Below, piece after piece: positions 515-33,554 of a stretch of 64,000 nt of DNA. The stretch is taken from the IMG/VR virus record IMGVR_UViG_3300032331_003609, positions 62,001 to 126,000 of that record. One strand, given 5' to 3'. Position 1 is the stretch's first letter; every line of letters begins with the position of its first letter. The translations under genes and the position numbers were made by a program. The notes under the pieces were generated by a model. That model did not search any database and was not told where the DNA came from. It was given only the letters and a program-made list of their open reading frames with translations.

Positions 515-1741
515 ATGGTCTGGAATTACAAAGACACATTGCTAGTTCACGTTGAGCTTTCTAATATGTGTAATGCTGCTTGTCCGCTTTGTCCAAGATA
601 CGTGAATAACTCATTAAGAGTCAATCCCGAGCTTGATTTGGGTAGTGTTTCATTAGAAGATTTTAAAAAATGGTTCCCCTTAGATTTTGTTCAGAAAAGT
701 AAAAGCTGGATATTTTGCGGAACCAATGGTGATCCTATAATGGCAAGGGATGTTTACGAAATACTGGAATATGTACTTCGCAATTCGGAAGCGAAGGTTC
801 AGGTAAACACTAACGGATCCATCAGAGATGGGGAATTTTGGGAAAAAATGGGAGCATTATTTGCAGAACCCTGTGTCAATAGTAGATACGTTGTTTTTTC
901 AGTCGATGGATTGGAAGACACAAATCACATCTATAGAAGAAACGTCAAATGGGATAGGGTGATGGAAAATATGGGAGCATATTCCAAATCGGGTTCTACC
1001 GGAATTTGGGATTTTTTAATATTTAAACACAACGAACATCAGTTAGATGAGGCAGAGGCACTTTGTAAAAAAATAGGATTAGCGTTTTCTCCAAAAAGAC
1101 CTTTCGGGTTTGAGACAGGAAACCCAGATGAATATCAGGATCTAATGGTTTATGATTTAGATGGCAATTTTTTATACAGGATAGAACCTGCTAGCGAAGA
1201 GTGGAGATTAAACAGATCCCTCAATAAATTTCAAAAAGGGGAAGAAAAAATATGGGTTCCCGGGAAGGAGAAAAAAAGTAAGGATCAGACAGAAGAAAAA
1301 TGGAACGGATTAATAGAAAGAGATCTTCCTAAATATCAATTTCCAGAAAGATTCAAGGGAAAATCTGTTAGCTGTAAATCATGCCATCCTATAGGAAAGG
1401 AAATATACGTTGACTGTAAGGGTAATGTTATGCCTTGCTGTTTTGTAGGAACAATGTACAATAGTGATTTTCAACACCACGAAGCATTGCAGATCAAAAA
1501 GCACTTACAAGATTGGGGGTTAGATAAAATAAATTTAAACAACCATTCTCTTGAAGAAATATTAGACAGCAAGTATTTAGACGATGTATTTGCAAATAGA
1601 TGGGATGGTGCTAAAAAGGATGAGGATAAAATGGGATATTGTTTCAATACATGTTCGGTTGATCATATGAAAGACCTTTTCGTTAGAAAGGAGGAATTAC
1701 CTATATCCCCGGAAAAACACGAGATAAAAAGTCTTATATAG
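515..1741 (+). CDS. Radical SAM protein with SPASM/twitch-type C-terminal Cys cluster
   Basis: CNAACPLC CxxxCxxC motif, GTNGDP, TNGS, FSVDG, C-terminal C..G.VMPCC..C. Confidence 0.9.
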   Translation: MVWNYKDTLLVHVELSNMCNAACPLCPRYVNNSLRVNPELDLGSVSLEDFKKWFPLDFVQKSKSWIFCGTNGDPIMARDVYEILEYVLRNSEAKVQVNTNGSIRDGEFWEKMGALFAEPCVNSRYVVFSVDGLEDTNHIYRRNVKWDRVMENMGAYSKSGSTGIWDFLIFKHNEHQLDEAEALCKKIGLAFSPKRPFGFETGNPDEYQDLMVYDLDGNFLYRIEPASEEWRLNRSLNKFQKGEEKIWVPGKEKKSKDQTEEKWNGLIERDLPKYQFPERFKGKSVSCKSCHPIGKEIYVDCKGNVMPCCFVGTMYNSDFQHHEALQIKKHLQDWGLDKINLNNHSLEEILDSKYLDDVFANRWDGAKKDEDKMGYCFNTCSVDHMKDLFVRKEELPISPEKHEIKSLI

Positions 1742-1769
1742 AGGTATTTTTTAGTCGATATATAAAAAT

Positions 1770-4265
1770 ATGAACAATACTATAAATTTAGTTTATGATG
1801 ATTGGCCATTAGATCAGGATCATCCCAATCCTAATGGTGATAAATATTTTCCCGAACCTAATGCGTGGATGACAGGAGATGGTCCGATGGAAACCCTTAG
1901 ATATGATAATTATGTTCACAGAAGAATGGAGGACGTTGATAAGTATCAAGAGGAAAATTTCTTCTATGTTGTTTGGCATAGGCATTCTCTATACAATAGA
2001 TTTTTGCACTTTGACAGACTACCGATAGGTGATGACATGATTGGGCATTTTCAAAGAAAGCCTAATTTATTTCTTCTTTTGATAAATGATCAGGAAATCG
2101 AACCAAGAGAAACCATAAATAAACTTGATTTAGCTCTTGAAAGAAATAATATAGATCCAAGAAAAGTATTTTTAGTTAACAACAATTCAAGAAACTGGGA
2201 ATATAAAAGAGAACTTGGAAGTAACATCAATGTTCATAGCTGTAGAGCAATGCCCCTAGCTCTTGCAAAAACCCCCAAAAGTGTTTTCGTAGAGAATAAA
2301 GAGGGGTCATTTTTCATGTCACATAATCATTCTTTGAGAGAAAGCAGATCTGCTTTTGTTTGCCTTCTTAAGAAATATAATTTGATTGATGATTTTGATT
2401 GGTCCTATTTAAAACTCTGGAGAATGCCAACACAGGACTGGGAGACAATCTATAGAAGGATATTTAATGACTCTGATATGGAATTTTTAATGCCTGAGAT
2501 TGAATATTTCAATGCGTACGGGGTTAAGAAAAGCAATTATGAATCACATTTTCCATGGCTTGATGAAATAACCATGGATAGTCCTTCCTGGTGGGAAACA
2601 TTTAATCCTCAGCAGTACGAAAATACTTATTTCAATGTGACTGTAGAGACCCAATATTTCGGAAGGGATCTTCATATAACCGAAAAATCATTCAAGCCGT
2701 TTATACATTTGCAATTTCCTATGATACTAGCTTCTAGACATCATATTAAACATATGCGTGAATATTATGGCTACGATTTCTTTGATGATGTAATCAATCA
2801 TGATTATGATAACGTTAAGAGCGATAGAGATAGAATTTTTAGGTTTATAGAGGAATTAAAAAGGATTCAGGAAAATAAAGAATTCTTCATAGAATTTTAT
2901 AAGAATAATAAAGAAAGATTCTTAAAAAATCAAGAAATGGTTTATTCTTTTACTAATGAATATGATGCCAGCTATTTTTCTGCACTAACAAAATTTGATC
3001 ATCCAAAGGAAACGCTTAATTTAGTTTATGATAATTGGGACATGGAGACTAATCGTCCTATAAGGGGAAACTCTGAAGACCTATACACTAATACTTTTCA
3101 TATGAATTTGGATAGCGTTGTAGGATCACTTCAATTTGATAGGAGATTAATCAGAAGATTCAGACTAGAGGACGTTCCAAAAATGAAAAATCAAATATTT
3201 TTCTATTTCATAACTTTAATCCCCGGTATTTTATCCGAAAATATAAAAGCAGGGAAGCTTCCGATAAACAAAGATGCTATTAACACACTAAAGGAGTGTC
3301 CAAACTTTAATGTTATAATAATGAATGAACAGGAAGCTGAGAGGAAAGAAGCATTGGTACTTCTAGACAAATGGACAAGAGAAACAGGATTAGATCAGGG
3401 GCAAATATGGTTTTCCAATAACAATCCAAGGCTTGAAGAATTTAAGGAAGAAATAGGAACGGGAATAAACGTACATTCGACTGTTAGATTAGCTAACTTC
3501 ACTGCTAATTCTGTTATACATTCTGTAGGTAGAGTGGAATTTAAACCTAATAAAGATGGTGAATTTTTTATGTGTCATAACAGAAGACCAAGACCACATA
3601 GATATGGACTACTTTGCTTGCTTAAAAAGACAGGAATTTTAGAAGATGTTGATTGGTCCTTAGTTCAAGGATTTCAATTCAAGGATAATAAACACCCAGA
3701 AGCATTCTTTGGAGAAATATTCAACGGTGATGATATAGCAAATATGAGAGAAGAGATTGATTATTTTTCTAGCATCGAACAAAAGAAAAGTAGATATGAA
3801 GAGGAAAGAACATGGTTTGATGACAGAGATAATGAGAATAATGTTCCATGGAATGAAACATACGATAAGAATCAATTGGAAAATTCCTATTTTAATATCA
3901 CGACGGAAACGGAATTTGCTTCTGATTTAACACATATATCTGAGAAATCGTTTAAATCGTTTTGCGCAATGCAATTTCCATTAATACTTGCATCTGCACA
4001 TCATATTAGAGAAATTAAAAAGAAATATGATTTTGATTTCTTTGATGATGTTATCAATCATGATTATGATGAGGAGGAAAATCACAGAGATAGACTTTTT
4101 AAATTTGTTAAAGAGATAAAAAGAATAAATGACAATAAGGAATTCTTTATAGACTTTTATAAAAATAATAGGATGAGATTTGAAGAAAATTTAAGAAAAA
4201 TAGAAGAGAAGGTTAAGGATCAAACGGATTCAGATTTTCTTAAAAAAATATCAGGCATAATATGA
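1770..4265 (+). CDS. Tandem two-domain protein, putative GT-B glycosyltransferase-like (GT10-like ET...TEK motif)
   Basis: Internal duplication (NLVYDDW / NLVYDNW; YFNVTVET..ITEKSFK / YFNITTET..ISEKSFK). Confidence 0.55.
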   Translation: MNNTINLVYDDWPLDQDHPNPNGDKYFPEPNAWMTGDGPMETLRYDNYVHRRMEDVDKYQEENFFYVVWHRHSLYNRFLHFDRLPIGDDMIGHFQRKPNLFLLLINDQEIEPRETINKLDLALERNNIDPRKVFLVNNNSRNWEYKRELGSNINVHSCRAMPLALAKTPKSVFVENKEGSFFMSHNHSLRESRSAFVCLLKKYNLIDDFDWSYLKLWRMPTQDWETIYRRIFNDSDMEFLMPEIEYFNAYGVKKSNYESHFPWLDEITMDSPSWWETFNPQQYENTYFNVTVETQYFGRDLHITEKSFKPFIHLQFPMILASRHHIKHMREYYGYDFFDDVINHDYDNVKSDRDRIFRFIEELKRIQENKEFFIEFYKNNKERFLKNQEMVYSFTNEYDASYFSALTKFDHPKETLNLVYDNWDMETNRPIRGNSEDLYTNTFHMNLDSVVGSLQFDRRLIRRFRLEDVPKMKNQIFFYFITLIPGILSENIKAGKLPINKDAINTLKECPNFNVIIMNEQEAERKEALVLLDKWTRETGLDQGQIWFSNNNPRLEEFKEEIGTGINVHSTVRLANFTANSVIHSVGRVEFKPNKDGEFFMCHNRRPRPHRYGLLCLLKKTGILEDVDWSLVQGFQFKDNKHPEAFFGEIFNGDDIANMREEIDYFSSIEQKKSRYEEERTWFDDRDNENNVPWNETYDKNQLENSYFNITTETEFASDLTHISEKSFKSFCAMQFPLILASAHHIREIKKKYDFDFFDDVINHDYDEEENHRDRLFKFVKEIKRINDNKEFFIDFYKNNRMRFEENLRKIEEKVKDQTDSDFLKKISGII

Positions 4266-5959
4266 AAACAGTATTAATTACCGGATGTAACGGTTTAGTC
4301 GGAAGTTATCTTAGGGATATGTGTCTGAATAACGGATGGAAAGTTATTGGGGTCGATAGGAATTCGACGAAAAGAATCACAAAGAATTTAAATTACACAT
4401 TTAAAAAACTTGATCTTCTTTCAGAGATTAACATAATAAATTTATTTAAAGATTATAAATATGATGTTGTTTTTAATTGCTTTGGAATCAAAGGATCTCC
4501 GATAAAAGCAAAAGATAATCCGGCAGATTTTCTATATCCATCATTTAAAATAAACACCGAAATAATAAATCAGTGTTATCTGAATGATTCTTGGTTAGTT
4601 TTTGTCAGCTCTGTTGGTGTTTACAGTCCAGCAGAAAAATTCACGGAAGGAGATGTTTGGAAAACATTACCGTCAGAATCTGATTGGTTTCCTTCCTGGT
4701 CTAAAAGAATGGGAGAATTATTACTGGAATCATATAAAGTTCAGTATGGATACGATAAATGGACAATAGTAAGACCTGCAAATATTTTTGGGGAATACGA
4801 CGATTTTAGTGGAGGCGGAACCTTGATCTCAACGATGGTTAAAAAAGTATACGAAGCTAACGGAGAGATCGAAGCTTGGGGAGATGGTACTCCAATCAGA
4901 GATTTTATCTATGGAAAAGATGTCGCGTCTGCTTTAATTAAAGTGTATGAAAGAGGAGTAAGAGATATAGTAAATTGTGGATCTGGTATTGAGGTATCAA
5001 TAAAAGAGGTTATAGAAGAAATAATAAAAGCAAGCGGTAAACAAATATCTATCAATTGGAATTCATCCAAACCGAATGGGGATTTAAGAAGACTAATGGA
5101 CACAGATAAACAAGAGATACATGGTATAATGCCAGAAACTAAGTTTGAAGATGCTATTAAAAATGTATATGATTACTACATAAGATCTATTAAGGGGGAA
5201 GATCCAATAATACCAGCAAGCGATATATTAAAAGAAGGAGCATATTTGGGTAAAATATCAGATTTTTTAGAAGAAGACGAGCTAGAAAAATTCAAGGAAA
5301 TGATAAAATCAGTTAAAGAATATTCATCTGAAGATATAGAAAATAGACTTGTTTGTAGATATAATTATGACGATCTTGAAAATCCATATGATCATGCAAT
5401 TCCTCCAAGTAAAGTTCCGGAGAGGGATGCTTGGGTAAGGAAGAATAATTTTCATGTTTGGCAAAAGTGGTGGGAGTTTAAATACCCAGATCATGAATAT
5501 TTTGATAATATAGCAATTAAGATAATAAAGAATCTTTATCCCCAGGTATCGGAACATCTTGATAATCCTAGCAATGTAGATTCTAGGGGTAATATGGCAC
5601 TTTTTGAAGATGGACATTATATTGATATCCATAACGACGGAGCTAATGCTGGAAGATTATGTGTGATTATATTTTATTTATCTGACGAAAGCACATATCG
5701 TGACGGGGGTGGACAGCTTAAGATAATCACAAACTCAGGTAAAGAATGTTATATAGATCCATTTTTCGATAATTTTTGTGTTATGGATTTTGCTAGAAAT
5801 AATATAAAGCACGAAGTTAAGATGGTAAATAATGGATTTAAAAGGTACACGTATATAAATTTCATTAAATTCGAGGATAGCTCTCTTTTAGAAACTATCT
5901 TCCCGCCCATAGTAAAAGAGATTACTGAGACAAAAATAGAAAAGAAAAAAATAATATGA
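4262..5959 (+). CDS. NAD-dependent epimerase/reductase (GDP-fucose synthase-like) fused to a C-terminal 2OG-Fe(II) oxygenase domain
   Basis: TGCNGLVG, SSVGVY, WSKR, RPANIFG, WGDGTPIRDFIY; C-terminal HND...HEV...R..Y 2OG triad. Confidence 0.8.
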   Translation: MKTVLITGCNGLVGSYLRDMCLNNGWKVIGVDRNSTKRITKNLNYTFKKLDLLSEINIINLFKDYKYDVVFNCFGIKGSPIKAKDNPADFLYPSFKINTEIINQCYLNDSWLVFVSSVGVYSPAEKFTEGDVWKTLPSESDWFPSWSKRMGELLLESYKVQYGYDKWTIVRPANIFGEYDDFSGGGTLISTMVKKVYEANGEIEAWGDGTPIRDFIYGKDVASALIKVYERGVRDIVNCGSGIEVSIKEVIEEIIKASGKQISINWNSSKPNGDLRRLMDTDKQEIHGIMPETKFEDAIKNVYDYYIRSIKGEDPIIPASDILKEGAYLGKISDFLEEDELEKFKEMIKSVKEYSSEDIENRLVCRYNYDDLENPYDHAIPPSKVPERDAWVRKNNFHVWQKWWEFKYPDHEYFDNIAIKIIKNLYPQVSEHLDNPSNVDSRGNMALFEDGHYIDIHNDGANAGRLCVIIFYLSDESTYRDGGGQLKIITNSGKECYIDPFFDNFCVMDFARNNIKHEVKMVNNGFKRYTYINFIKFEDSSLLETIFPPIVKEITETKIEKKKII

Positions 5960-6930
5960 TAAACAAGAATTCAAGAATTTTGATTACCGGTGGATCTGGA
6001 TTGGTTGGGCAAAACCTAACTGAAAGATTGGTTGGGGAAGGCTATACAGATTTAAGAGTAAATCTTCACAGAAGAGGAGTTAGAAAAGTTCATGATAGTG
6101 TTAATTACACTTATCACGATCTTCAAACATATGACGGATGTCAAATTGCAACGCGAGATGTAGATGTTGTTTTTCATGCTGCTGCTTCCACGTCAAATGC
6201 TGTTGATACGGTAGTTGATCCACTGGCTCATGTTACACCAAATGTTGCAATGAATAATTTTCTTATTGATGCAGCTTGGAGAAATAATGTTCAGCATTAT
6301 ATTTTCATATCTTCCAATACAGTTTATCCTCCAAAAGGAGATGAGCCAGTGATCGAAACTGATTTTTTGTTTGACGAGCCATATCCTGTTTATTTTCCGG
6401 TTGGCTGGATGAAGAGATACGCAGAGGTTCAATGTGAACTGTATGGCAAATATCTTCCAAGAAAAATGAAATCAACTGTAATAAGACCAGCTAACCTGTT
6501 CGGTCCACATGACAAGTATGATTTTAATAAATGTCACGTTACACCAGCAACAATAAGAAAGGTAGCAGATAGGATGGATCCAATACCGGTATGGGGAGAC
6601 GGATCAGAATTGAGAGACCTTCTTTATATAGACGATTTCGTAGAAGCATTACAGACAGTGATGGAAAAAGAGACCGAAATGTTCGAAGTATATAACGTTG
6701 GATCTAATAAGGTATATTCAGTTTTAGAAGTTCTCGAAAAAATGAAAGAAATAGCACAGCATAATGCACCAACAGAGTTCATTAGTGGTAAACCTTCTAT
6801 GATACCTACTAGAAAAATAGATTCTAATAAGATTAAAGATAAATTAGGATGGGAAGCTAAAACACCGCTAGAAGATGGATTACTTAGTGCATATCAATGG
6901 TACTTAGAGAACAAAAAAGAATTTGAATAG
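5956..6930 (+). CDS. NAD-dependent epimerase/dehydratase (Fcl/WcaG-like extended SDR)
   Basis: TGGSGLVG, SSNTVYP, RPANLFGP, WGDGSELRDLLYIDD, YNVGS. Confidence 0.85.
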   Translation: MINKNSRILITGGSGLVGQNLTERLVGEGYTDLRVNLHRRGVRKVHDSVNYTYHDLQTYDGCQIATRDVDVVFHAAASTSNAVDTVVDPLAHVTPNVAMNNFLIDAAWRNNVQHYIFISSNTVYPPKGDEPVIETDFLFDEPYPVYFPVGWMKRYAEVQCELYGKYLPRKMKSTVIRPANLFGPHDKYDFNKCHVTPATIRKVADRMDPIPVWGDGSELRDLLYIDDFVEALQTVMEKETEMFEVYNVGSNKVYSVLEVLEKMKEIAQHNAPTEFISGKPSMIPTRKIDSNKIKDKLGWEAKTPLEDGLLSAYQWYLENKKEFE

Positions 6931-7834
6931 TATGAAAGGATTAATTTTTGCTGGATGTTCATTCACTTGGGGACAGGGATTGTATTACTATTCGGGTCTT
7001 GATACATTAGTTGAACCTGCACCAGATTGCTATGATGCTAAACTTGTTACCGATGCCCATAAAAAATATATGGAGACATTAAGATACCCAAGATTGGTTG
7101 CAAATCATTTTAAAACGTTTGAGGTTGTTTCTAAACAAAATGGAGGATCCGAAGAAACATCCGTACACTTTATAAATTCAGCATTTAATCCCGTTAATAA
7201 ATTTGATTTTCTGATAGATCAAACTTTCTCTTTTAGCGAGATCGAGTATGTAATAATACAAACTTCTCAGCCTAATAGAAATTCTTTTTATTTTGAATAT
7301 AAGGGAGAAGAGTGCCAATTTTTAATTCACGAGAAAACTACTAAGGGTAAGTTCTATGAATGGTTAATCGAAGAAAGAAAAATAACAATTGATGAATGGT
7401 TCGAAGATCATAAGAAGGATTATTTTGAAAAAATATCATCTTTAATGAAATTTCTAGAATCTAATGGGGTTAAAACAAAAATCCTTTGCTGGGAGGAAGA
7501 CTATTTAGATCTTATTAGATCTGATATTTTTATATACAATAGATTTATACCGATTAAATACAGAGATGAAAATTTTGATTCTATAAGAAAGATGATGGGT
7601 AAACATCCGCATCTCACTATAAATTCGGATTATGATAATTTTTCAGATCCCCCTAAGGATCATCACCCATCGAAAGAATGTCATCAAGTTATTTCTGAAT
7701 CTATAATTAATTCCATACAAAAAGATCTAGATAACAAAAAAGAATCTTACGTTTTTGACGGATCAAAAGAAGCGATAAAAGATTTTACTAGTACAATTCA
7801 ACCAATTAGAAAAAAAATAAAGAGTCTTATATAA
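6923..7834 (+). CDS. SGNH/GDSL hydrolase-like protein
   Basis: FAGCSFTWG block I and C-terminal DHHP (DxH-type) motif. Confidence 0.65.
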   Translation: MNSMKGLIFAGCSFTWGQGLYYYSGLDTLVEPAPDCYDAKLVTDAHKKYMETLRYPRLVANHFKTFEVVSKQNGGSEETSVHFINSAFNPVNKFDFLIDQTFSFSEIEYVIIQTSQPNRNSFYFEYKGEECQFLIHEKTTKGKFYEWLIEERKITIDEWFEDHKKDYFEKISSLMKFLESNGVKTKILCWEEDYLDLIRSDIFIYNRFIPIKYRDENFDSIRKMMGKHPHLTINSDYDNFSDPPKDHHPSKECHQVISESIINSIQKDLDNKKESYVFDGSKEAIKDFTSTIQPIRKKIKSLI

Positions 7835-9272
7835 TCTTCTCCGGAGGATATGGGTATGTTCCTGTTTCAAAATGTGTTATTCTTCCATCATTCAAATTAA
7901 CAACAGGAATTGATTGATCTACTTTTATAGTTTCGTACCATTCTGATAATTCGGGAAACGTCTCTTTGAAATTTTTTCCTCTTCTGCTATCATACTGAAC
8001 ATAAAAGCTTTTGAAGTCGTGGTGTAACACTGATTTATCATCTTCTGTTGTTGTGTGACCTTTTTCTACTACCTGAAGATAATCTAACAGTCTTTGCATT
8101 TGTGCAAATTCCCCTACACTAAATAGATTAGGTGTCATTTTTTCGTTAAACCATTTACTTATTTTCGAATGAAGTTCTATCTTTATCTCGTCAGGTAAAA
8201 CTAAGGGTGACATGAATGCTGGCCATCTTAGAATATTAAGATCCACGTTTGGCTTATTAGCTCCATACTTCTTTTTTAATACTATCATATCATCTAAGAA
8301 ATCTGTAATGCTAAATAAACAAAGACTATTGATTGTCATCATGATGGTCAATGATCTTAACTTGGCTCTTTCTAACAAACTAACTAAATTGTTTCTCCAT
8401 GTTTCATACACCAATCCATCTCTAATATACTCTGCATGTCTTCCGTAAGATTCGTTGCTGGTATAGATGTCCATTTCTTTAATGTCCATCGTATTTGACA
8501 TCTCAATCATTTTTTCCAGTGTCTGTTCTGTCATCCCAAGATTTGAGTTAACAGCAAGCCTTAAATTAGGTGCAGGGCTGGATTTAAGTATTTCTATAAA
8601 ATCCCAAAAATTATGGCTTAATGAAGGTTCTCCCCCTGTGATTCTAATCTCTTCTAATGTTTGAGATAATTCTGGCCACCATTCAAAAAATGCTTGAACG
8701 AATGGATTTCTTTCGTTATGTTTTCCAAATATCTCTGACCAAGATCCATCACTTCTGTAAGCACCCGCAGAATCAGTTCTCATTTTTTGGTATGGACCAA
8801 ATTTCTGAATTTCCTTTCCCCATGTTGTGCTATATCCAGCATTACAATAACTGCAAGCAAAATTACACGTTCTGTCAAAACTTATTTCTAGGGTCTTTAA
8901 AAGAACATCATCTCTGTAATCCATTTCTTGAATTTTAGAAATGTCATCTTCGTCATAAATGATACTCTTATAAACCCTATCTGATACGTTATTTCTTCCA
9001 ATATCCTCTATCTTCCAGCAATATGAGCACTCAGCAGGTCTAATCCCAGTTAGCATCATTTTCCTCATCTGTTTCTTGTGCTTAGTATTATGGATTGCTG
9101 AGGGGTTTGTTTTTATCTCCTCCAGATCTATTGGGTGGGGAAGAGGTAGATGACACGAACCCGTATACCCGTGGCCAAGATGTATGCTTGCATTGTACCA
9201 TTTTGCTGCACAAAAGCTTTTACTGACCTTATTTAGATTCTTTTCTCTCCATTCTATTAGTTCTTTTGACAT
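7827..9272 (-). CDS. Radical SAM protein with N-terminal twitch-like domain
   Basis: N-terminal CAAKW..CH..C..CW cluster; CNFACSYC; ITGGEP. Confidence 0.9.
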   Translation of the reverse strand: MSKELIEWREKNLNKVSKSFCAAKWYNASIHLGHGYTGSCHLPLPHPIDLEEIKTNPSAIHNTKHKKQMRKMMLTGIRPAECSYCWKIEDIGRNNVSDRVYKSIIYDEDDISKIQEMDYRDDVLLKTLEISFDRTCNFACSYCNAGYSTTWGKEIQKFGPYQKMRTDSAGAYRSDGSWSEIFGKHNERNPFVQAFFEWWPELSQTLEEIRITGGEPSLSHNFWDFIEILKSSPAPNLRLAVNSNLGMTEQTLEKMIEMSNTMDIKEMDIYTSNESYGRHAEYIRDGLVYETWRNNLVSLLERAKLRSLTIMMTINSLCLFSITDFLDDMIVLKKKYGANKPNVDLNILRWPAFMSPLVLPDEIKIELHSKISKWFNEKMTPNLFSVGEFAQMQRLLDYLQVVEKGHTTTEDDKSVLHHDFKSFYVQYDSRRGKNFKETFPELSEWYETIKVDQSIPVVNLNDGRITHFETGTYPYPPEKII

Positions 9273-27568: not shown

Positions 27569-27656
27569 GGAGAGATGGCAGAGTTGGTCGATTGCGTCAG
27601 TCTTGAAAACTGAAGAACGGGAAACTGTTCCGTGGGTTCGAATCCTACTCTCTCCG
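27569..27656 (+). tRNA. tRNA-Ser (TGA)
   Basis: GGAGAGA/TCTCTCC, long variable arm, TTCGAAT, G73. Confidence 0.95.
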
Positions 27657-27699
27657 CAGGCGCAATTTCGTACCTTATACAGATATAGGGTATGAATAA

Positions 27700-27771
27700 G
27701 CATCTTAAGCATTGCAGGCGATGCGCCAGATTTGTAATCTGGATAACTCGGTTCGATTCCGGGCGGATGCT
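27700..27771 (+). tRNA. tRNA-Thr (TGT), atypical D-loop
   Basis: CCAGA-TTTGTAA-TCTGG anticodon arm, TTCGATT T-loop, GCATCT/GGATGC acceptor. Confidence 0.75.
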
Positions 27772-27864
27772 CAATACTAACGTAAAATAAGTACACTAAC
27801 ATAATATCTGTTAGAATACAAAAGTTCGGTAGCAAGGTTATTAACGCGTTTTATAAAGATATAG

Positions 27865-27985
27865 GCCGGTGTGGCGGAATGAATAATCTTGAATTCGAAT
27901 AGAGATTATTAGACGTCCCGTAATTCTAGAAAAGGTGGTGTATCCGAAATGGACATCGTGAAGGTAGTCAACCCTTCCACCGGCA
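27865..27985 (+). pseudogene. tRNA-Leu-like element with 30-nt D-loop hairpin insertion and no clear anticodon arm
   Basis: GCCGGTG/CACCGGC-A acceptor, TGGCGGAAT..AGACG, variable arm, GAAGG/CCTTC T-stem. Confidence 0.55.
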
Positions 27986-28094
27986 CCTTATTTAAGATAT
28001 TCTAAGAACAGCGTCGAGCCGGATTTTGCGTCGGTCTTAGATTAGATTTGTCCAATGGGAGAGCCGGCCGCGACCCCGGACAAATCACTATATT

Positions 28095-28168
28095 GGTTCT
28101 GTAGCTCAGTTGGATAGAGCGCCACCCTTCTAAGGTGGATGTCATTGGTTCGAATCCAATCGGGATCA
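28095..28168 (+). tRNA. tRNA-Arg (TCT)
   Basis: Canonical cloverleaf, CCACC-CTTCTAA-GGTGG. Confidence 0.93.
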
Positions 28169-28173
28169 CAATT

Positions 28174-28308
28174 AAGGTTGATTGGGGAATGGTTATGTCT
28201 ATAGCTCGAGCGTGGATACTGGCTGGCATAATCGGAGTTTGGAGGTATTCACCTAAGTAATGCCAATCGTAAAAGAGATCGTCCACTGAACCATCTTTCT
28301 CTTTCCTT
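28174..28308 (+). ncRNA. Candidate structured ncRNA inside the tRNA operon
   Basis: Nested helices AAGG/CCTT, ATGGTT/AACCAT, GTGGA/TCCAC, TGGCAT/ATGCCA, AGGT/ACCT. Confidence 0.5.
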
Positions 28309-28315
28309 AAAATAT

Positions 28316-28390
28316 GTTGGATGTAGCCTAATGGTAGGGCAAATGCTTGTGGCGCATTACGCGTGGGTTCGATCCCCATCATTCAACCCA
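28316..28390 (+). tRNA. tRNA-His (GTG)
   Basis: G-1:C73 8-bp acceptor, AATGC-TTGTGGC-GCATT, CCA. Confidence 0.93.
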
Positions 28391-28394
28391 ATAT

Positions 28395-28470
28395 CTAGAT
28401 GTAGAGGAGCCAAGTTTATCTCGCTGCTTTTGGAAAGCAGAGCACGCTGGGGCGGAGCCAGCCATTTAGA
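28395..28470 (+). tRNA. tRNA-Pro (TGG) with non-canonical D- and T-loops
   Basis: C1:G72, A73; CTGCT-TTTGGAA-AGCAG; T-arm GCTGG-GGCGGAG-CCAGC. Confidence 0.7.
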
Positions 28471-28538
28471 CAAAAAGATCAAAGAGACCGCTAAATCGAG
28501 TTAGTGAAAATCTACATTCTCTTTGGTCTTTTATATTA

Positions 28539-28612
28539 GGACTTGTAACTCAGTTGGTTAGAGTGCAACACTCATAATGTTGAAGCCCCTGGTTCGAGCC
28601 CAGGCTGGTCCA
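28539..28612 (+). tRNA. tRNA CAT, probably Ile2 (lysidine-modified, reads ATA); elongator Met not excluded
   Basis: Canonical cloverleaf CAACA-CTCATAA-TGTTG; G1:C72. Confidence 0.85.
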
Positions 28613-28698
28613 CGAAATAGTGTCTTGGTACGCTCTGAAGAAATTCAACGACAAGGTCTCGGTAAGCGAAACGCGTTCGATCTTGCCCAAAATATAAA

Positions 28699-28780
28699 GG
28701 CCCCCTGTTGTAATTGGTAGCCAATTCAGATTTAGGATCTGATGTCGCAAGACGTGTCGGTTCGAGTCCGACGGGGGTCA
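28699..28780 (+). tRNA. tRNA-Leu (TAG)
   Basis: TCAGA-TTTAGGA-TCTGA, variable arm TGTC-GCAA-GACG, TTCGAGT. Confidence 0.92.
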
Positions 28781-28852
28781 CAACAAGATTAGGTACAAAA
28801 AGATATTAAGAAACTAAACCTAAAAACGATATATAATATTCAACTAAACAAA

Positions 28853-28936
28853 ATGAGAAACCAGAATCAATATAATTATTACCCAATGCCTGAACAAGGT
28901 AATGAGGGAAATTATATGGACACAGATCTGGGATAA
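28853..28936 (+). CDS. Leader peptide 2 MRNQNQYNYYPMPEQGNEGNYMDTDLG (putative attenuator)
   Basis: 27-codon ORF after GATATATA (28828-28835) and before terminator. Confidence 0.75.
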   Translation: MRNQNQYNYYPMPEQGNEGNYMDTDLG

Positions 28937-28956
28937 CATTTTTTAAATATATTTTG

Positions 28957-28989
28957 AAAACCCAGATCTCAATAAGGTCTGGGTTTTTT
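28957..28989 (+). terminator. Intrinsic terminator/attenuator upstream of tRNA operon 2
   Basis: CCCAGATC-TCAATAA-GGTCTGGG stem plus T6. Confidence 0.85.
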
Positions 28990-28993
28990 ATTT

Positions 28994-29066
28994 GGGGATG
29001 TAGCTCCAGCGGTAGAGCGCGTGACTGTTAATCACTAGGTCGTAAGTTCGAATCTTACCATCCCCT
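28994..29066 (+). tRNA. tRNA-Asn (GTT)
   Basis: GGGGATG/CATCCCC, CTGTTAA loop, TTCGAAT. Confidence 0.93.
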
Positions 29067-29071
29067 CAGAT

Positions 29072-29145
29072 TGCAAGATAGTTCATTTGGTGAGAACACT
29101 GGATTCATAACCCAGAGGTGATGAGTTCGAATCTCATTCTTGCGA
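29072..29145 (+). tRNA. tRNA-Met (CAT), probably elongator
   Basis: TGCAAGA/TCTTGCG, TTCATAA loop, TTCGAAT. Confidence 0.85.
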
Positions 29146-29150
29146 CAAAT

Positions 29151-29222
29151 GCTCCCGTCGACTAGCGGTTAGGTCACCTCCCTTTCACGGAGGTAGCACG
29201 GATTCGAATTCCGTCGGGAGTA
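29151..29222 (+). tRNA. tRNA-Glu (TTC)
   Basis: CCTCC-CTTTCAC-GGAGG. Confidence 0.92.
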
Positions 29223-29227
29223 CAAAT

Positions 29228-29308
29228 TGGGATATCGCATAGTGGCAATTGCGGCTGACTGTAAATCAGCTCTCTTTGAGTTCGGCGGTTCGAGTCCGTC
29301 TATCCCAA
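29228..29308 (+). tRNA. tRNA-Tyr (GTA)
   Basis: GCTGA-CTGTAAA-TCAGC, long variable arm, TTCGAGT. Confidence 0.93.
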
Positions 29309-29314
29309 CAATAC

Positions 29315-29673: not shown

Positions 29674-29712
29674 CTAATCAACTGAATTAATCTATATTCA
29701 TTTTATGCTCAT

Positions 29713-30879
29713 ATGAAAATTGATTTTTGGTATAGCAATATTATTCCAAAATCCGGAATTCAGGATCTACTTGAAGAAATAGACGAGGATGTTTTATTTA
29801 AGAATATTGATACTGATACAGTAAATACTAATAAATTAAATTTTTTAGTCTTTACGTGGGAAACAAAATGGGCATTTTCCAACACCTACTATACACATTC
29901 CGACGAGTTTATAAGATTACTATCAAGACTTCAGGATAAAGATTTTTATTTTATAGCAGATTTTTCTGGAGAAGCTCACACACGTCCTGACGAAAATAGT
30001 TTATTGTTCCTAAATAAATTAAGGGATAATAAGATCAATATAAATCGGATAATTGTTGCAAACAATGATTCTTCCAAAATAGGAATTAATAAAATAAGAT
30101 ATGAATCATTTATACTTAACACGTGCTTTTTTCCTAATTTCTTTTTGTCAACATGTAATCATCTGGATAATATCCTAGGTAACCAGCAAATAAAAAATTC
30201 TATAATACCTGATAAAAAATTCTTATGTCTCAATCGTAGAATGTTCCATCATAAGTACAAAGTTATAGAGGAATTATTCCATAGAGGATTATTAGAAGAT
30301 ACTAGATTTAGCTGGGTAGATAATAAGGATAAAAAAAATCTATTCAATAAAAATCTGAACTCATATTTAGGGATAGACATAAATAATTTTAAATCAATTC
30401 AATTAGAAGGTGATGTAATGTATGGTAGCGATTTATCAAGACATGAAGAATATCTTTATACTGTAAATCCTGATTGGTATTATAAGAGTAAAGTTAATAT
30501 TATCACTGAAACAATATTGGAGGGAAAAGAAATTCACATAACAGAAAAAACGTGGAAGGCAATTTATTTAGGAATTCCTTTTGTGATTTATGCATCAAAG
30601 AATCATCTTAAGATCCTAAGAGAAATGGGGTTTAAGACATTTAACACATTGATCAACGAAGATTATGATGAAATGATTGGAGATGCTAAACTAAAACAGA
30701 TTATAGATAGTGCTGAAGAATTAGCTAGAATTTATAATACCCCAGAAGTTTTAGAGATATGCAGATTTAATCAGAAAATTTATTCAGATAAAATACATCG
30801 TAAGAATATTTGTAAAAATTCTTTTTTGAATAGGATAGTTGATATTAAAAATAATACTATTAAATTAAAGATCTTTTAA
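29713..30879 (+). CDS. Single-domain paralogue of the 1770..4265 repeat (GT10-like ET..TEK motif)
   Basis: KFLCLNRR, SKVNIITET..IHITEKTWKAI..GIPFVI. Confidence 0.55.
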   Translation: MKIDFWYSNIIPKSGIQDLLEEIDEDVLFKNIDTDTVNTNKLNFLVFTWETKWAFSNTYYTHSDEFIRLLSRLQDKDFYFIADFSGEAHTRPDENSLLFLNKLRDNKININRIIVANNDSSKIGINKIRYESFILNTCFFPNFFLSTCNHLDNILGNQQIKNSIIPDKKFLCLNRRMFHHKYKVIEELFHRGLLEDTRFSWVDNKDKKNLFNKNLNSYLGIDINNFKSIQLEGDVMYGSDLSRHEEYLYTVNPDWYYKSKVNIITETILEGKEIHITEKTWKAIYLGIPFVIYASKNHLKILREMGFKTFNTLINEDYDEMIGDAKLKQIIDSAEELARIYNTPEVLEICRFNQKIYSDKIHRKNICKNSFLNRIVDIKNNTIKLKIF

Positions 30880-31489
30880 CTATAGGTTTGGTGTATCTAG
30901 TTTTGAAAATTTCAGCCAATTCGCTGTGTCCAACCTCACCATAATGTCCATCATCAACTTCACCTTCAGATTCTTCTGAAACTGTTAGGCATCTTATAAA
31001 TTCACATTTTGTTATAGCTCCTCCAAAAGGTGTCCAATGAATTATGTCATTATTAGGAAGAGCCTTGTTTATTAATCTTATCCAAGAATCCACTTCGTGT
31101 GCAAATTTATACGAAGATCTATTTAACATTATTTCGTCTATTGATTGCTTAGATAAATGATTGAAAAGAGAAAGATCATAATCATCACCAGGTCTTAGAC
31201 TAACCCATGTATCGTTTTTTGTCGTTAGTCTAAATCTAACTGGATTTGACCATCCGATTATAACAAAGTCATTTTCTTTTATTTCCCAGATATTTTTACA
31301 GATGTTTTCGAAAATAGCATAATTATCAGAGCCTCCTTCCCCTATATTCTTTTTAATGAAACTAAGATCCCTAGATAGAATATCAGAAAAGTTAAGAGGT
31401 TTATAACCCTTCCATTCTATGTATTTTTTTGCCCAGTGTCCAAATCCCTCTGTGTATGAGTCACCAAATGTCCAAAGTGTGTTCGCCAT
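30860..31489 (-). CDS. SGNH/GDSL hydrolase-like protein
   Basis: LWTFGDSYT, GSDN, DGHY; start moved to MANTLW. Confidence 0.7.
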   Translation of the reverse strand: MANTLWTFGDSYTEGFGHWAKKYIEWKGYKPLNFSDILSRDLSFIKKNIGEGGSDNYAIFENICKNIWEIKENDFVIIGWSNPVRFRLTTKNDTWVSLRPGDDYDLSLFNHLSKQSIDEIMLNRSSYKFAHEVDSWIRLINKALPNNDIIHWTPFGGAITKCEFIRCLTVSEESEGEVDDGHYGEVGHSELAEIFKTRYTKPIVKRSLI

Positions 31490-31558
31490 GTTGATAATAT
31501 ATACTATAGAAGTTAAAACTAAAATATTCCAACTATCATATATAAAATAAAACCCCGC

Positions 31559-32335: not shown

Positions 32336-32342
32336 ATTTTGA

Positions 32343-33554
32343 ATGAAGCTAATACACACATTTGTTCCGAATAAGTTTGATCTAAAAAACGAGAAGGATA
32401 AAAACATAATCTGGAAGGATTTAATGTATGTCCAGATGCTTAGTGTTTTGCTTGCTAATAGGGAATATGGAGGTATTTCATTGTACACCAACAACACAAT
32501 AAAAAAACAAATATTAGATATAGGTGTTCCCTATTCTGACATAGACACTGACATATTACAAGACACCACATCAGATCTATTTTGTATACCTAAACTCAGG
32601 ATTTATAGAGAAATAAAAGAACCTTTTGTACATATTGATACAGATACTCTTATCTATAATAAGATAGATTTTTCAAAATTTGATTCGTCCGTAGTTTATT
32701 CACATTCGGATATTAGACCTCCGTTACATAAAAATGGCGACGATAAACTCTATGAGATCTTTAATAATTATCCATCCCTAGGAGATTCAGATTCGTTCTT
32801 TAAATCTGCTAAAATAACATACCTAGATCTGTTTAATAGATTGAATAATGATCATTCAGAATTTAAATTAAACAACATAAGGGTAGGTGATATACCTAAT
32901 ATGAATATTATAATTGTTAATGACCATGACAATTTTAATAAGGCATCTCAAATGTCCCTGGATCATTATATAAGAAATAAGGAAGTTATAGACAGCACTA
33001 AAAATGGGGAATGTTACATAGAGCAGCTAATGATACACCTGAATATGATGGAGATTAGCGAAAAGTATAGGGAAGAAGTTATAGCAAAAAAGACCTTCAT
33101 TCTTAAAGATTCACCATTTATGCTAGATGCTGATTTTGGGTCTCATTTAGATGATTTAAAATTTCCATTCACCATGATACACAATTCTCATAAAGATGTA
33201 GAAATAGATGAAACAATTCATATTAATGGAGTATTATATTCAAGGGCTCAAGAATATCACGAGCATTACGGTAGAACGACTAAGGTAAATTCGATGGAAG
33301 ACATTATAAAATTATTTGATTTTGATTTTTATGGTCTTTCCCACCTAACATTCTATAAATGGTCTGAATTTTTTCAAGCAATTGTAATAGGATATATTGT
33401 AAAAAACTTCGGAGAAGAATATGTTAGAAGTGTTTACGAATATTATAAAACAATTTATCCTGTAGTTTATAGTTTTCCTAGATTATCAAAAGGAGAAACA
33501 TTATACCAGGATCTAACAGGATTTAAATTTGAAAAGATAAAAAGCTTGGTCTGA
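32343..33554 (+). CDS. Hypothetical protein, glycosyltransferase-like (DxD)
   Basis: PKL.IY...EPFVHIDTD. Confidence 0.5.
   Translation: MKLIHTFVPNKFDLKNEKDKNIIWKDLMYVQMLSVLLANREYGGISLYTNNTIKKQILDIGVPYSDIDTDILQDTTSDLFCIPKLRIYREIKEPFVHIDTDTLIYNKIDFSKFDSSVVYSHSDIRPPLHKNGDDKLYEIFNNYPSLGDSDSFFKSAKITYLDLFNRLNNDHSEFKLNNIRVGDIPNMNIIIVNDHDNFNKASQMSLDHYIRNKEVIDSTKNGECYIEQLMIHLNMMEISEKYREEVIAKKTFILKDSPFMLDADFGSHLDDLKFPFTMIHNSHKDVEIDETIHINGVLYSRAQEYHEHYGRTTKVNSMEDIIKLFDFDFYGLSHLTFYKWSEFFQAIVIGYIVKNFGEEYVRSVYEYYKTIYPVVYSFPRLSKGETLYQDLTGFKFEKIKSLV

What the first reader, a model, noticed from the sequence alone, without database searches (positions are those of the whole stretch)
515..33554. Shared C-terminal K-(S/K)-(L/I)-(I/V) tail on unrelated modification enzymes
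Ends: rSAM 515 HEIKSLI; epimerase-2OG 4262 IEKKKII; SGNH 6923 KKIKSLI; rSAM 7827 PPEKII; SGNH 30860 IVKRSLI; 32343 EKIKSLV. Weaker matches: 1770 KKISGII and 29713 IKLKIF. These proteins have different folds, sit in two separate clusters and on both strands, while most core replication and structural genes lack the tail. S-x-I/V-COOH matches the class I PDZ-ligand consensus. Inference: a docking signal that assembles the enzymes on a scaffold or compartment, or a protease (Tsp/Prc-type) tag.
Basis: partly seen in the sequence, partly recalled or inferred. Interest (0 to 1): 0.62.

Follow-up and report, generated by a model that had tools for sequence, protein, structure and literature searches.

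The report
Shared C-terminal tag on phage enzymes
About a dozen unrelated enzymes of one accessory gene block in this large marine T4-like phage all end in the same short tail (K-x-x-K-S/T-L-I), a real and widely conserved peptide signal that travels with one unusual ligase-plus-self-cleaving protein and has not been described before.

Summary
All eight ends were verified. In the 244.8-kb phage record, [KR][ST][LI][ILV]-COOH ends 10 of 265 ORFs (about 0.7 expected from AT-rich frames). All 10 lie in one 40-kb region that starts about 5.5 kb upstream of the window.

The signal is a peptide, not DNA. Ser at -3 uses both codon boxes at background rates, and tails occur in every downstream context. 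The six KSL[IV] proteins are not paralogues.

It is not AT bias. P-SSM2, HTVC008M and Syn9 carry homologous enzymes without tails. In IMG/VR, equally AT-rich loci without the tail show 2/125 tailed neighbours, against 151/340 in tail-type loci.

The tail (187 variants: K-x-x-K-[S/T]-[L/I]-[I/L]) marks nearly every gene within about six genes of one protein, F500, which never has it (0/74). F500 is an ATP-grasp-ligase-like domain, then a Hint domain ending in His-Asn, then a hypervariable Cys-rich peptide.

Best reading (0.42): a common docking or recognition handle, with F500 as candidate receptor. This is inferred, not shown. Rivals are a degron and a membrane tag. A PDZ/Tsp reading is poorly supported: no PDZ, S41 or ClpP gene was found, and S/T is present in only 56% of tails.

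The parts
515..1741 (+). Radical SAM/SPASM enzyme, 408 aa. Tail K-S-L-I is encoded at 1727-1738, stop TAG.
   Evidence: Pfam PF04055 and PF13186. Tail verified. Orthologues at 83-86% identity end KSII and KNLI. The 72-78% group alternates ISEII with ISEIK, and more distant homologues have no tail.
1770..4265 (+). 831-aa protein with no Pfam family. Weak tail S-G-I-I at 4251-4262. Its stop overlaps the next gene's ATG (ATATGA).
   Evidence: The orthologue in L037 ends AGII and the one in L002 ends KNLI.
4262..5959 (+). NAD-epimerase/dehydratase fused to a 2OG-Fe(II) oxygenase, 565 aa. Tail K-K-I-I at 5945-5956.
   Evidence: Pfam PF01370 and PF13640. The orthologue in L037 ends KKKLI.
5956..6930 (+). 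Second NAD-epimerase, 324 aa, without tail (ends KEFE). An internal negative example.
   Evidence: Pfam. The orthologue in L037 also lacks the tail (EEFR).
6932..7834 (+). 300-aa protein (TTG start at 6923 also possible) with no Pfam family. Tail K-S-L-I at 7820-7831. Its stop lies in the palindrome TTATATAA shared with the convergent gene.
   Evidence: Homologues at 41-42% identity in L001 and L002 are shorter and lack the tail.
7827..9272 (-). Radical SAM enzyme, 481 aa. Tail E-K-I-I at 7830-7841. Not independent of the previous gene (8-nt overlap).
   Evidence: Pfam PF04055. Its paralogue at 9850-11235 (36% identity) has no tail.
29713..30879 (+). 388-aa protein, related to part of the 831-aa protein. 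Ends L-K-I-F at 30865-30876. It overlaps the next gene by 20 nt in a palindrome.
30860..31489 (-). 209-aa protein (the ORF extends to 31591 if TTG is used). Tail R-S-L-I at 30863-30874.
   Evidence: Close relatives end KRSLI, KKSLI and KRPII (L003-L005).
32343..33554 (+). DUF6734 protein, 403 aa. Tail K-S-L-V at 33540-33551, stop TGA, followed 9 nt later by tRNA-Gly, so there is no coupled downstream gene.
   Evidence: Pfam PF20508. tRNA. Relatives end IKSLV, TTGLL and NPGLI.
1..285 (-). 5' part of the P-loop (APS-kinase/zeta-toxin-like) kinase gene. It opens the conserved trio kinase, 125-aa protein, DUF2061, which precedes the tailed block. The rest of the core lies upstream of the window at genome 53.7-62.3 kb (locus L006), including the tail-less F500 at L006:12933-14435(-).
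   Evidence: Pfam. Operon order is conserved in 74 loci.

Best explanation
The tail is a C-terminal short linear motif under selection at the protein level, with consensus K-x-x-K-[S/T]-[L/I]-[I/L]-COOH. In one lineage of large, AT-rich T4-like phages it has been placed on almost every enzyme of an accessory operon: a flavin halogenase, several 2OG-Fe(II) oxygenases, radical-SAM enzymes, an epimerase-oxygenase fusion, DUF6734 and several unknowns.

I propose that it is a common recognition handle. One partner reads the free, hydrophobic, Lys-flanked C-terminus and so brings enzymes of unrelated folds to the same place or substrate.

The best candidate partner is F500, the only protein in the block that never carries the tail. 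F500 has three parts:
- an ATP-grasp carboxylate-amine-ligase-like domain, of a kind whose relatives bind the free C-terminal carboxylate of a peptide or protein tail;
- a Hint (intein-like) domain ending in His-Asn;
- a hypervariable peptide of about 30 residues with 6-8 Cys, often Trp-rich. Asn cyclisation would release it, and it is a plausible substrate of the halogenase, oxygenases and radical-SAM enzymes.

Shown: the motif, its enrichment, its peptide-level conservation, its restriction to this lineage, its positional link to F500, and the F500 folds.

Inferred: that the tail is bound by a partner, that the partner is F500, that F500 self-cleaves, and that the peptide is the pathway's substrate.
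For: (1) Enrichment cannot come from composition. 10/265 ORFs carry the strict tail against about 0.7 expected.

(2) Peptide-level selection. The six KSL[IV] proteins show no pairwise BLAST similarity. Ser at -3 is coded AGT 28%, TCT 26%, TCA 18%, TCG 15%, AGC 8%, TCC 5%, so both codon boxes are used at about background rates. Leu codons are about background. Tails occur with overlapping (89), close (38), distant (31) and convergent or absent (13) downstream genes.

(3) Conservation. Halogenase homologues of about 400 aa, down to 44% identity, end in a basic linker plus [LIF][ILVM]. The 375-395-aa and roughly 510-aa forms lack it. Orthologues in L003-L005, L031 and L037 keep the final two hydrophobic residues while the residues before them drift.

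(4) Lineage specificity at matched GC. Tail-type halogenase loci have 151/340 tailed neighbours. Non-tail loci have 32/887, and those with GC<=32% have 2/125 (p=4e-23). Within single families: halogenase 87% against 0%, 2OG cluster 78% against 7%, a 198-aa family 100% against 0%. P-SSM2 (3/290), HTVC008M (5/178) and the Syn9 dioxygenase/halogenase cluster show none.

(5) Link to F500. The F500 profile is found in 16 of 22 tail-type loci and in none of 54 non-tail loci, P-SSM2 or HTVC008M. In 74 further F500 loci, 585/1203 neighbours are tailed and F500 is tailed in 0/74. Tail frequency is 58-100% at gene positions -6 to +5 and at most 20% beyond +-7. F500 homologues with far weaker profile scores (profile E 1e-36 to 1e-76; L119-L121), Hint-terminated forms (L032, L037) and L036 also have tailed neighbours.

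(6) F500 anatomy. The AF2 model has pLDDT 90.1. Residues 288-470 match inteins, BIL and Hedgehog Hint domains (Z 15.8; PDB profile E 2.9e-8 to the KlbA intein). Residues 1-282 match YgiC (Z 9.6), glutathionylspermidine synthetase (Z 9.1), glutathione synthetases, TTLL, LysX/ArgX and RimK. E21-x-N23, R112, D122 and R229 are invariant and H467-N468 nearly so across 90 sequences. After His-Asn comes a hypervariable Cys-rich peptide or a canonical Hint domain.
Against: No binding evidence exists. The single complex prediction (F500 with the last 40 residues of the 214-aa oxygenase) scored 0.00, which the tool says counts neither way.

Co-occurrence of F500 and tails could partly reflect shared descent within one phage clade rather than function.

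The ATP-grasp assignment rests on fold matches of moderate Z (9-10) and an atlas lead. Pfam finds nothing above threshold.

Known C-terminus-reading ATP-grasp ligases mostly read acidic tails, and this one is basic and hydrophobic.

In this genome tails also sit on enzymes 10-40 kb from F500, so any receptor must act in trans. A host factor would fit that equally well.
Confidence: 0.42

Rival explanations
1. Degron. The tail is a C-terminal degradation signal read by a host AAA+ protease: nonpolar last residues preceded by basic ones, like the MuA-type ClpX 'C-motif 2' (RRKKAI), or the nonpolar-tail rule for FtsH/Clp. The pathway enzymes would then be short-lived while the untagged F500 product persists.
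For: The sequence resembles basic-then-nonpolar C-terminal degrons (knowledge of ClpX motif classes and C-terminal destabilising rules; not tested here). The motif depends strictly on the free C-terminus. F500, the presumed product precursor, is the one untagged protein in the block. The phage record encodes no protease of its own that would be needed, so a host protease is compatible.
Against: It does not explain why homologous enzymes in P-SSM2, HTVC008M, Syn9 and 54 other phage loci never carry it. It does not explain why the tag tracks F500 so tightly. Keeping destabilising tags on about a dozen enzymes through deep divergence of a lytic phage lineage lacks an obvious benefit. The preference for S/T at -3 and K at -4 and -7 is more specific than a generic nonpolar-tail rule.
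Confidence: 0.2
2. Membrane tag. The polybasic stretch plus two terminal hydrophobic residues is a minimal peripheral-membrane anchor. It would concentrate enzymes that act on a lipid-linked or envelope substrate at the inner membrane, perhaps next to the conserved DUF2061 membrane protein.
For: Lys is enriched at -4 to -8 and L/I at the end. In several tails the hydrophobic residues fall at i, i+3, i+4 (IKSLI). A predicted small membrane protein (DUF2061) is conserved just upstream of the block. Sugar, LPS-type and GDSL-like enzymes lie in the neighbourhood.
Against: Two hydrophobic residues next to a charged alpha-carboxylate make a very weak anchor. Known bacterial membrane-targeting sequences are amphipathic helices of 8-15 residues. 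The near-invariance of the very last two residues and the S/T preference point to a pocket rather than a bilayer. The kinase, the 126-aa protein and DUF2061 itself lack the tail. Nothing was tested.
Confidence: 0.12
3. PDZ class I ligand or Tsp/Prc tag. A PDZ-domain scaffold or tail-specific protease binds [S/T]-x-hydrophobic-COOH.
For: There is a formal match: S/T at P-2 in 56% of 187 distinct tails (4-5-fold enriched) and L/I/V at P0 in 100%, though the tails were selected for that ending.
Against: S/T is replaceable by K, N, E, P or G in orthologues. P-1 is 96% L/I, whereas PDZ class I leaves P-1 free. No PDZ (PF00595, PF13180, PF17820) or S41 peptidase is in the 244.8-kb record, which is 86% complete. 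I saw no signal peptides by eye in the tailed proteins (not tested with a predictor), while bacterial Prc/Ctp and most PDZ proteins are periplasmic (knowledge).
Confidence: 0.04
4. No function. The tails are a by-product of AT-rich codon usage, of signals for the next gene (overlapping start, promoter, ribosome loading), or of common descent of the proteins.
For: The genome is 34% GC. I and K are each the last residue of about 17% of ORFs. ATA and TGA are somewhat over-used at tails because of ATATGA start overlaps. Two pairs of convergent genes share palindromic ends.
Against: Expected counts from the same DNA are more than 10-fold too low. Equally AT-rich loci without F500 have 2/125. Ser uses both codon boxes, and tails occur without any downstream gene. 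Tightly coupled replication genes of the same genome lack them. The proteins are not paralogues.
Confidence: 0.02

Closest known systems
C-terminal cargo or sorting peptides that mark a functional set of unrelated proteins (encapsulin cargo-loading peptides, PTS1 -SKL, KDEL/KKXX)
   Same: A very short motif at the extreme C-terminus, shared by proteins of different folds that work together, absent from the rest of the proteome, and read in trans by one receptor.
   Different: The sequence differs (K-x-x-K-S/T-L-I). No encapsulin shell, microcompartment shell or organelle is evident. The receptor is unknown. I know of no phage operon described with such a motif.
RiPP leader peptide / RRE recognition
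   Same: Many unrelated tailoring enzymes (halogenase, oxygenases, radical SAM/SPASM) are clustered with a precursor that has a conserved part and a hypervariable Cys-rich part. A common recognition element would explain how all of them find one substrate.
   Different: The polarity would be reversed. Here the short peptide is on the enzymes and the globular element is on the precursor. The 'leader' is a 470-aa ATP-grasp-plus-Hint protein. No RRE domain was looked for or found. No product is known.
ATP-grasp ligases that read a free peptide or protein C-terminus (glutathionylspermidine synthetase/YgiC, glutathione synthetase, RimK on S6, LysX on LysW, tubulin-tyrosine ligase)
   Same: The F500 N-domain matches these structures (Z 9.6 down to 5.7) and keeps an invariant E-x-N plus Arg/Asp residues. 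The tail requires a free C-terminus.
   Different: Those enzymes mostly read acidic or glutathione-like termini. No activity, substrate or binding is shown for F500. Pfam does not recognise the domain.
ClpX C-motif 2 (MuA RRKKAI) and ssrA-type C-terminal degrons
   Same: Basic residues followed by nonpolar residues at the free C-terminus.
   Different: The tail is confined to one phage operon and tied to F500. It prefers S/T at -3 and LI at the end. Degradation was not tested.
Class I PDZ ligands; Tsp/Prc tail recognition
   Same: [S/T]-x-hydrophobic-COOH fits 56% of tails.
   Different: P-2 is not conserved and P-1 is conserved. No PDZ or S41 gene was found. The proteins look cytoplasmic by eye (not tested).
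Pre-toxin HINT (PT-HINT) domains of polymorphic toxins and bacterial intein-like domains
   Same: The F500 Hint domain ends in His-Asn and is followed by a hypervariable C-terminal module. Relatives are hit by PF07591/PF14890.
   Different: The released module would be a Cys-rich peptide of about 30 residues rather than a toxin domain. It is fused to an ATP-grasp-like domain. Found only in viral contigs so far (limited sensitivity).

Membership tests
Class I PDZ-binding motif | Free C-terminus with hydrophobic P0 | tested here: met
   All tails directly precede the stop. In the 187 distinct tails, which were selected for ending in two hydrophobic residues, P0 is I 68%, L 29%, V 3%.
Class I PDZ-binding motif | Ser/Thr at P-2 as the specificity-determining residue, with P-1 variable | tested here: not met
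   S/T at P-2 in only 56%. Orthologues swap it for E, P, G, N or K. P-1 is L/I in 96%.
Class I PDZ-binding motif | A PDZ-domain (or S41/Tsp) reader in the same system | tested here: not met
   PF00595, PF13180, PF17820 and PF03572 are all absent from the 244.8-kb record, with controls positive. The host is unknown, so a host reader is not excluded.
ClpX C-motif 2 / nonpolar C-terminal degron | Basic residues followed by nonpolar residues at the free C-terminus | tested here: met
   K 55% at -4 and 43% at -7. L/I at -2 and -1.
ClpX C-motif 2 / nonpolar C-terminal degron | Tail-dependent degradation by an AAA+ protease | not testable with these tools
   No ClpP in the phage record. Needs stability assays.
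Encapsulin or microcompartment cargo peptide | A shell protein encoded with the cargo, and a matching peptide consensus | not tested
   No shell gene was noticed in the annotated block, but no dedicated search was run. The consensus differs from the GSL-type cargo-loading peptide as I recall it.
Hint/intein superfamily (for F500 residues 288-470) | Hint fold | tested here: met
   VIA Z 15.8, rmsd 2.0 over 139 residues to the NpuDnaB intein. BIL, Hedgehog and many inteins also match. Foldseek E 4e-8.
Hint/intein superfamily (for F500 residues 288-470) | Terminal His-Asn at the C-terminal junction | tested here: met
   H467 and N468 are nearly invariant in 90 sequences. The PDB profile hits the KlbA intein at E 2.9e-8.
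Hint/intein superfamily (for F500 residues 288-470) | Conserved +1 nucleophile (needed for splicing, not for C-terminal cleavage) | tested here: not met
   The +1 residue is S, T, G, P, Q, E, V, F or I. Cleavage rather than splicing is therefore expected. Cleavage itself was not tested.
ATP-grasp carboxylate-amine ligases (for F500 residues 1-282) | ATP-grasp fold | tested here: met
   YgiC Z 9.6 (202 residues aligned), GspS Z 9.1, glutathione synthetases Z 8-9, TTLL/LysX/RimK Z 5.7-6.4. Foldseek finds YjfC at E 1e-5. Atlas look-alikes are ATP-grasp families. Z values are moderate.
ATP-grasp carboxylate-amine ligases (for F500 residues 1-282) | Sequence-family membership and catalytic residues | tested here: inconclusive
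   No Pfam family passes (best is RimK at E 0.27 in one member). An invariant E-x-N and invariant Arg/Asp fit a Mg/ATP site but were not mapped onto a template.

The most novel reading that the evidence does not exclude
The tails are substrates, not just docking sites. The F500 ATP-grasp domain would activate the free Ile/Leu carboxylate of each tailed enzyme and ligate it to an amine, for instance the new N-terminus of the Cys-rich peptide released by the Hint domain. That would be an ATP-driven, phage-encoded protein C-terminal tagging or conjugation system built from a ligase and a self-cleaving domain.
Probability: 0.1. Interest if true: 0.95.

Novelty: new variant of a known kind. Interest (0 to 1): 0.78.

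Why it matters
Cyanophage-type clusters of halogenases and dioxygenases have been known since 2010 without a function or a substrate (PMC2938197; PMC7824862). This result does three things.

First, in one widespread lineage of large aquatic phages these enzymes are tied together by a shared C-terminal peptide. The F500 search matched 310 IMG/VR stretches, and F500 has 318 clusters in the 50%-identity representative library.

Second, it points to the one untagged protein in the block as hub and probable precursor: an ATP-grasp-like ligase, a Hint domain and a hypervariable Cys-rich peptide.

Third, it makes the question testable with a seven-residue synthetic peptide.

It could also serve as a small portable tag.

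Tried and rejected
- **Complex prediction.** F500 (90-row alignment) with the last 40 residues of the 214-aa oxygenase scored 0.00. The tool's verdict is 'no answer', so it counts neither way.
- **First AF2 model of F500.** With 15 close sequences it was unusable (pLDDT 48.6). A 90-sequence alignment fixed this.
- **Pfam on F500 and several tailed proteins.** Nothing was found.
- **Known phages.** Megablast of the replication module against INPHARED phages found no match. tblastn of the 300-aa tailed protein found none either.
- **sHSP idea** (the I-x-I groove of a phage Hsp20). Dropped: no HSP20 in this record, Hsp20 is common in phages without tails, and the tail is not I-x-I.
- **Sliding-clamp idea** (Q-x-S-L-I resembling QL[SD]LF). 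Dropped: Q is not conserved and T4-type clamp motifs are acidic. Not tested further.
- **DNA-level signal** (late promoter TATAAATA, start-codon coupling). Rejected by the codon and context analysis.
- **Paralogy.** Rejected.
- **General property of marine T4-like phages.** Rejected with P-SSM2, HTVC008M and Syn9.
- **F500 in cellular genomes.** A scan of 185,579 species' genomes found nothing, but only one peptide pattern could be used. The widest F500 alignment was too divergent to scan IMG/VR.
- **Host.** Not determined. The one-piece tmRNA argues weakly against an alphaproteobacterial or marine picocyanobacterial origin of that gene.
- **Not used.** The read-mapping tools.
Full report
**What the window is.** The window is bases 62,001-126,000 of a single 244,850-bp IMG/VR virus record (34.4% GC, CheckV about 86% complete). 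It is a T4-like myophage: UvsX, gp41-type helicase, gp46/47 nuclease and large terminase are recognised by PHROGs. It carries a one-piece tmRNA and 13 tRNAs. It is not close to any phage in the INPHARED collection at nucleotide level.

**Check of the observation.** Two of the weaker cases are not independent. The 6932-7834(+) and 7827-9272(-) genes converge and share the palindrome TTATATAA, which reads L-I-stop on one strand and I-I-stop on the other. The 29713-30879(+) and 30860-31489(-) genes overlap by 20 nt in another palindrome.

Directly upstream of the window a run of minus-strand genes ends RTIL, RTLI, KSLI (a Trp-halogenase homologue), KSLI (2OG oxygenase), KSII, QNLI (2OG oxygenase) and KTLI (2OG oxygenase).

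Genome-wide, [KR][ST][LI][ILV]-COOH ends 10 of 265 ORFs, and all 10 lie within genome 56.4-95.6 kb (10/43 against 0/222, p=4.8e-9). Position-specific C-terminal composition predicts 0.05-0.10 such ends in that region. All stop-to-stop frames of the same DNA give 0.26%, or about 0.7 for the genome. Shuffling the last 12 residues gives a mean of 0.23 and never more than 3.

**Peptide or DNA?** The six KSL[IV] proteins show no pairwise similarity at E<1e-3, so this is not paralogy. In 22 related loci plus this genome, Ser at -3 is encoded by all six codons from both boxes at roughly background frequencies, and Leu codons are at background. Tails occur whether the next gene overlaps (89), is within 15 nt (38), is further away (31), or is convergent or absent (13). 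The only DNA-level trace is a moderate excess of ATA and TGA caused by ATATGA start overlaps. Tightly coupled replication genes in the same window lack the tail. Selection therefore acts on the peptide.

**Conservation.** The halogenase has thousands of homologues. Those of about 400 aa, down to 44% identity, end in a Lys-rich linker followed by two hydrophobic residues (KSLI, LELI, PPLI, KELI, KTFI, GKLI, KKLL and so on). The 375-395-aa forms stop just before this extension, and the roughly 510-aa forms end differently. Close relatives of the window genes behave the same way: IKSLV becomes TTGLL and NPGLI, and KRSLI becomes KKSLI and KRPII. The radical-SAM/SPASM enzyme keeps a tail only in its nearest relatives, and one subgroup alternates ISEII with ISEIK. 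A logo from 187 distinct tails in 44 sequence clusters gives K 43% at -7, K 55% at -4, S 32%/T 24%/K 14%/N 11% at -3, L 72%/I 24% at -2 and I 68%/L 29% at -1.

**Lineage specificity.** P-SSM2 (3/290 ORFs with basic plus two hydrophobic ends), Pelagibacter phage HTVC008M (5/178) and the Syn9 dioxygenase/halogenase cluster have homologous enzymes but no shared tail.

Eighty IMG/VR loci found with a halogenase alignment, 76 of which had a callable halogenase, fall into two classes. In 22 loci the halogenase has the tail, and 151 of 340 neighbouring ORFs have it too. In 54 loci it lacks the tail, and 32 of 887 neighbours have one. Restricting the second class to GC<=32% gives 2 of 125 (p=4e-23). 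Within single families the contrast is as sharp: halogenase 87% against 0%, 2OG oxygenases 78% against 7%, a 198-aa family 100% against 0%.

**The tail-less centre.** Gene order in the tail-type loci is conserved: P-loop kinase, a protein of about 125 aa, DUF2061 (none tailed), then 2OG oxygenase, halogenase, a 214-aa oxygenase, a 242-aa protein and a 101-aa protein (all tailed). Next comes a roughly 500-aa protein without tail (F500). After it come a 273-aa protein, another oxygenase, and 174-, 414-, 352- and 232-aa proteins (all tailed).

An F500 profile finds the protein in 16 of the 22 tail-type loci and in this genome. It finds it in none of the 54 non-tail loci, P-SSM2 or HTVC008M. In 74 further loci fetched with F500 itself, 585 of 1,203 neighbours carry the tail and F500 never does. 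Tail frequency is 58-100% from six genes before to five genes after F500 and falls to 20% or less beyond seven genes. Much more weakly scoring F500 homologues (L119-L121), versions that end in a canonical Hint domain (L032, L037) and L036 also sit among tailed genes. In the present genome F500 is at genome 54,933-56,435(-), 5.6 kb upstream of the window. The tail has spread here to sugar-type enzymes up to 40 kb away.

**What F500 is.** Pfam finds nothing. The family has 318 clusters in a 1.84-billion-protein representative library. With a 90-sequence alignment AlphaFold gives pLDDT 90.1, with only residues 472-500 disordered.

- Residues 288-470 are a Hint/intein fold (Z 15.8; Foldseek E 4e-8; PDB profile E 2.9e-8 to the KlbA intein).
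- Residues 1-282 match ATP-grasp carboxylate-amine ligases: YgiC Z 9.6, glutathionylspermidine synthetase Z 9.1, glutathione synthetases, and more weakly TTLL, LysX/ArgX and RimK. An independent language-model look-alike search also lists ATP-grasp families, as a lead only.
- E21-x-N23, R112, D122 and R229 are invariant, and H467-N468 nearly so.
- After His-Asn the family carries either a hypervariable peptide of 25-60 residues with 6-8 Cys (here and in its near relatives Trp-rich, C-W-C...C-G..C....C-P.C) or a canonical Hint domain.
- The +1 residue is not a conserved nucleophile, so C-terminal cleavage by Asn cyclisation, not splicing, is the expected chemistry. This is inferred from intein biochemistry and was not tested.

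**Interpretation.** The data show a lineage-specific C-terminal motif, selected at the peptide level, that labels the enzymes of one operon and spares its central protein. The simplest mechanism is a common handle read by one partner.

I favour F500 as that partner for three reasons. It is the only consistent exception in the block. It co-occurs with tails across F500 forms that have diverged greatly from one another. Its N-domain belongs to a structural class whose characterised members bind the free carboxyl end of a peptide or protein tail; this last point rests on established knowledge of GspS, glutathione synthetase, RimK/S6, LysX/LysW and TTL.

A conserved globular 'leader' that recruits many tailoring enzymes to a hypervariable Cys/Trp-rich peptide would resemble RiPP logic with reversed polarity. 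None of the binding, cleavage or substrate steps is demonstrated. The one co-folding attempt gave no answer. I put this reading at about 0.42.

A C-terminal degron (0.20) and a polybasic-hydrophobic membrane tag (0.12) remain open. Both fit the sequence, but neither explains the restriction to F500-bearing phages as well.

The PDZ/Tsp version (0.04) is weak: S/T is only preferred, P-1 is conserved, no PDZ, S41 or ClpP gene is present, and I saw no signal peptides by eye in the tailed proteins. Chance, AT bias, downstream-gene signals and paralogy are excluded as far as computation allows.

**Known context.** Clusters of tandem dioxygenases and halogenases in cyanophages were described and attributed to peptide or secondary-metabolite modification (PMC2938197; PMC7824862). 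Neither passage mentions a shared C-terminal motif or an ATP-grasp-Hint protein. My literature searches found no description of either. The search covers open-access texts only.

**Verdict.** This is a real, robust and apparently undescribed feature. It is a new variant of the known idea of C-terminal sorting or docking peptides, embedded in an uncharacterised phage pathway. Interest 0.78.

Noticed in passing
L006:12933-14435(-) (genome 54,933-56,435; 5.6 kb upstream of the window): F500: an ATP-grasp-ligase-like domain, a Hint domain ending His-Asn, and a hypervariable 6-8-Cys (here Trp-rich) peptide of about 30 residues. The family has 318 representative clusters, and some members replace the peptide with a canonical Hint domain. 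It looks like a self-cleaving precursor of a Cys-rich peptide. Six Cys and about 30 residues, with an adjacent ligase domain, make head-to-tail cyclisation conceivable (speculation).
   Followed up: yes
window 19123-21612 and 21618-24602 (+): Two collagen-like proteins (829 and 994 aa; G-X-Y repeats such as [10 protein letters not shown]; 25-28% Gly; local GC 47% against 34%). They lie next to two GT7 (beta-1,4-galactosyltransferase-like) genes, one of which carries a Laminin_G domain. They are possible targets of Lys hydroxylation and glycosylation. The C-terminal ends look like intramolecular-chaperone domains (not tested).
   Followed up: partly
window 18042-18466 (+) and 27569-29309, 33563-33637: A one-piece tmRNA (Rfam RF00023, 80 bits; tag ending ...APVALAA) followed by tRNA-Met, a block of 11 tRNAs and a lone tRNA-Gly. 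A tmRNA in a T4-like phage is uncommon and may hint at the host.
   Followed up: partly
window 38764-40254 (-) and 37140-38762 (-): A MoxR-type AAA+ ATPase followed by a DUF2201_N putative metallopeptidase plus VWA-like domain, conserved in relatives L003-L005. It is a conceivable tail-reading machine, but it is not specific to the tail lineage as far as I recall (CobS/CobT-like pairs are common in cyanophages).
   Followed up: no
window 7820-7841 and 30860-30879: Convergent gene pairs whose stop codons and last codons overlap in palindromes (TTATATAA; TTAAAGATCTTTAA). One DNA stretch therefore encodes a hydrophobic tail on both strands.
   Followed up: yes
window 1-285 (-) with L006:19265-19851(-): A conserved untailed trio precedes the tailed block in most loci: a P-loop kinase (APS-kinase/zeta-toxin-like, 145 aa), a protein of about 125 aa with no family, and the small predicted membrane protein DUF2061. 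The kinase and the 125-aa protein also occur in phages without tails (the two fell into a single BLAST cluster). DUF2061 was seen only in tail-type loci, though short ORFs may have been missed.
   Followed up: partly
IMG/VR loci L063, L079, L122: Some contigs carrying the halogenase/F500 block are labelled GVMAG (giant-virus bins), although the block sits in T4-like phage contigs of 237-333 kb elsewhere (L042, L050, L057, L078). This is probably a binning artefact.
   Followed up: no
window 17029-17634 (+), 15975-16757 (+): A HAD_SAK_2 (RNA-repair-type HAD) protein and a calcineurin-like phosphoesterase lie next to the tmRNA/tRNA region.
   Followed up: no
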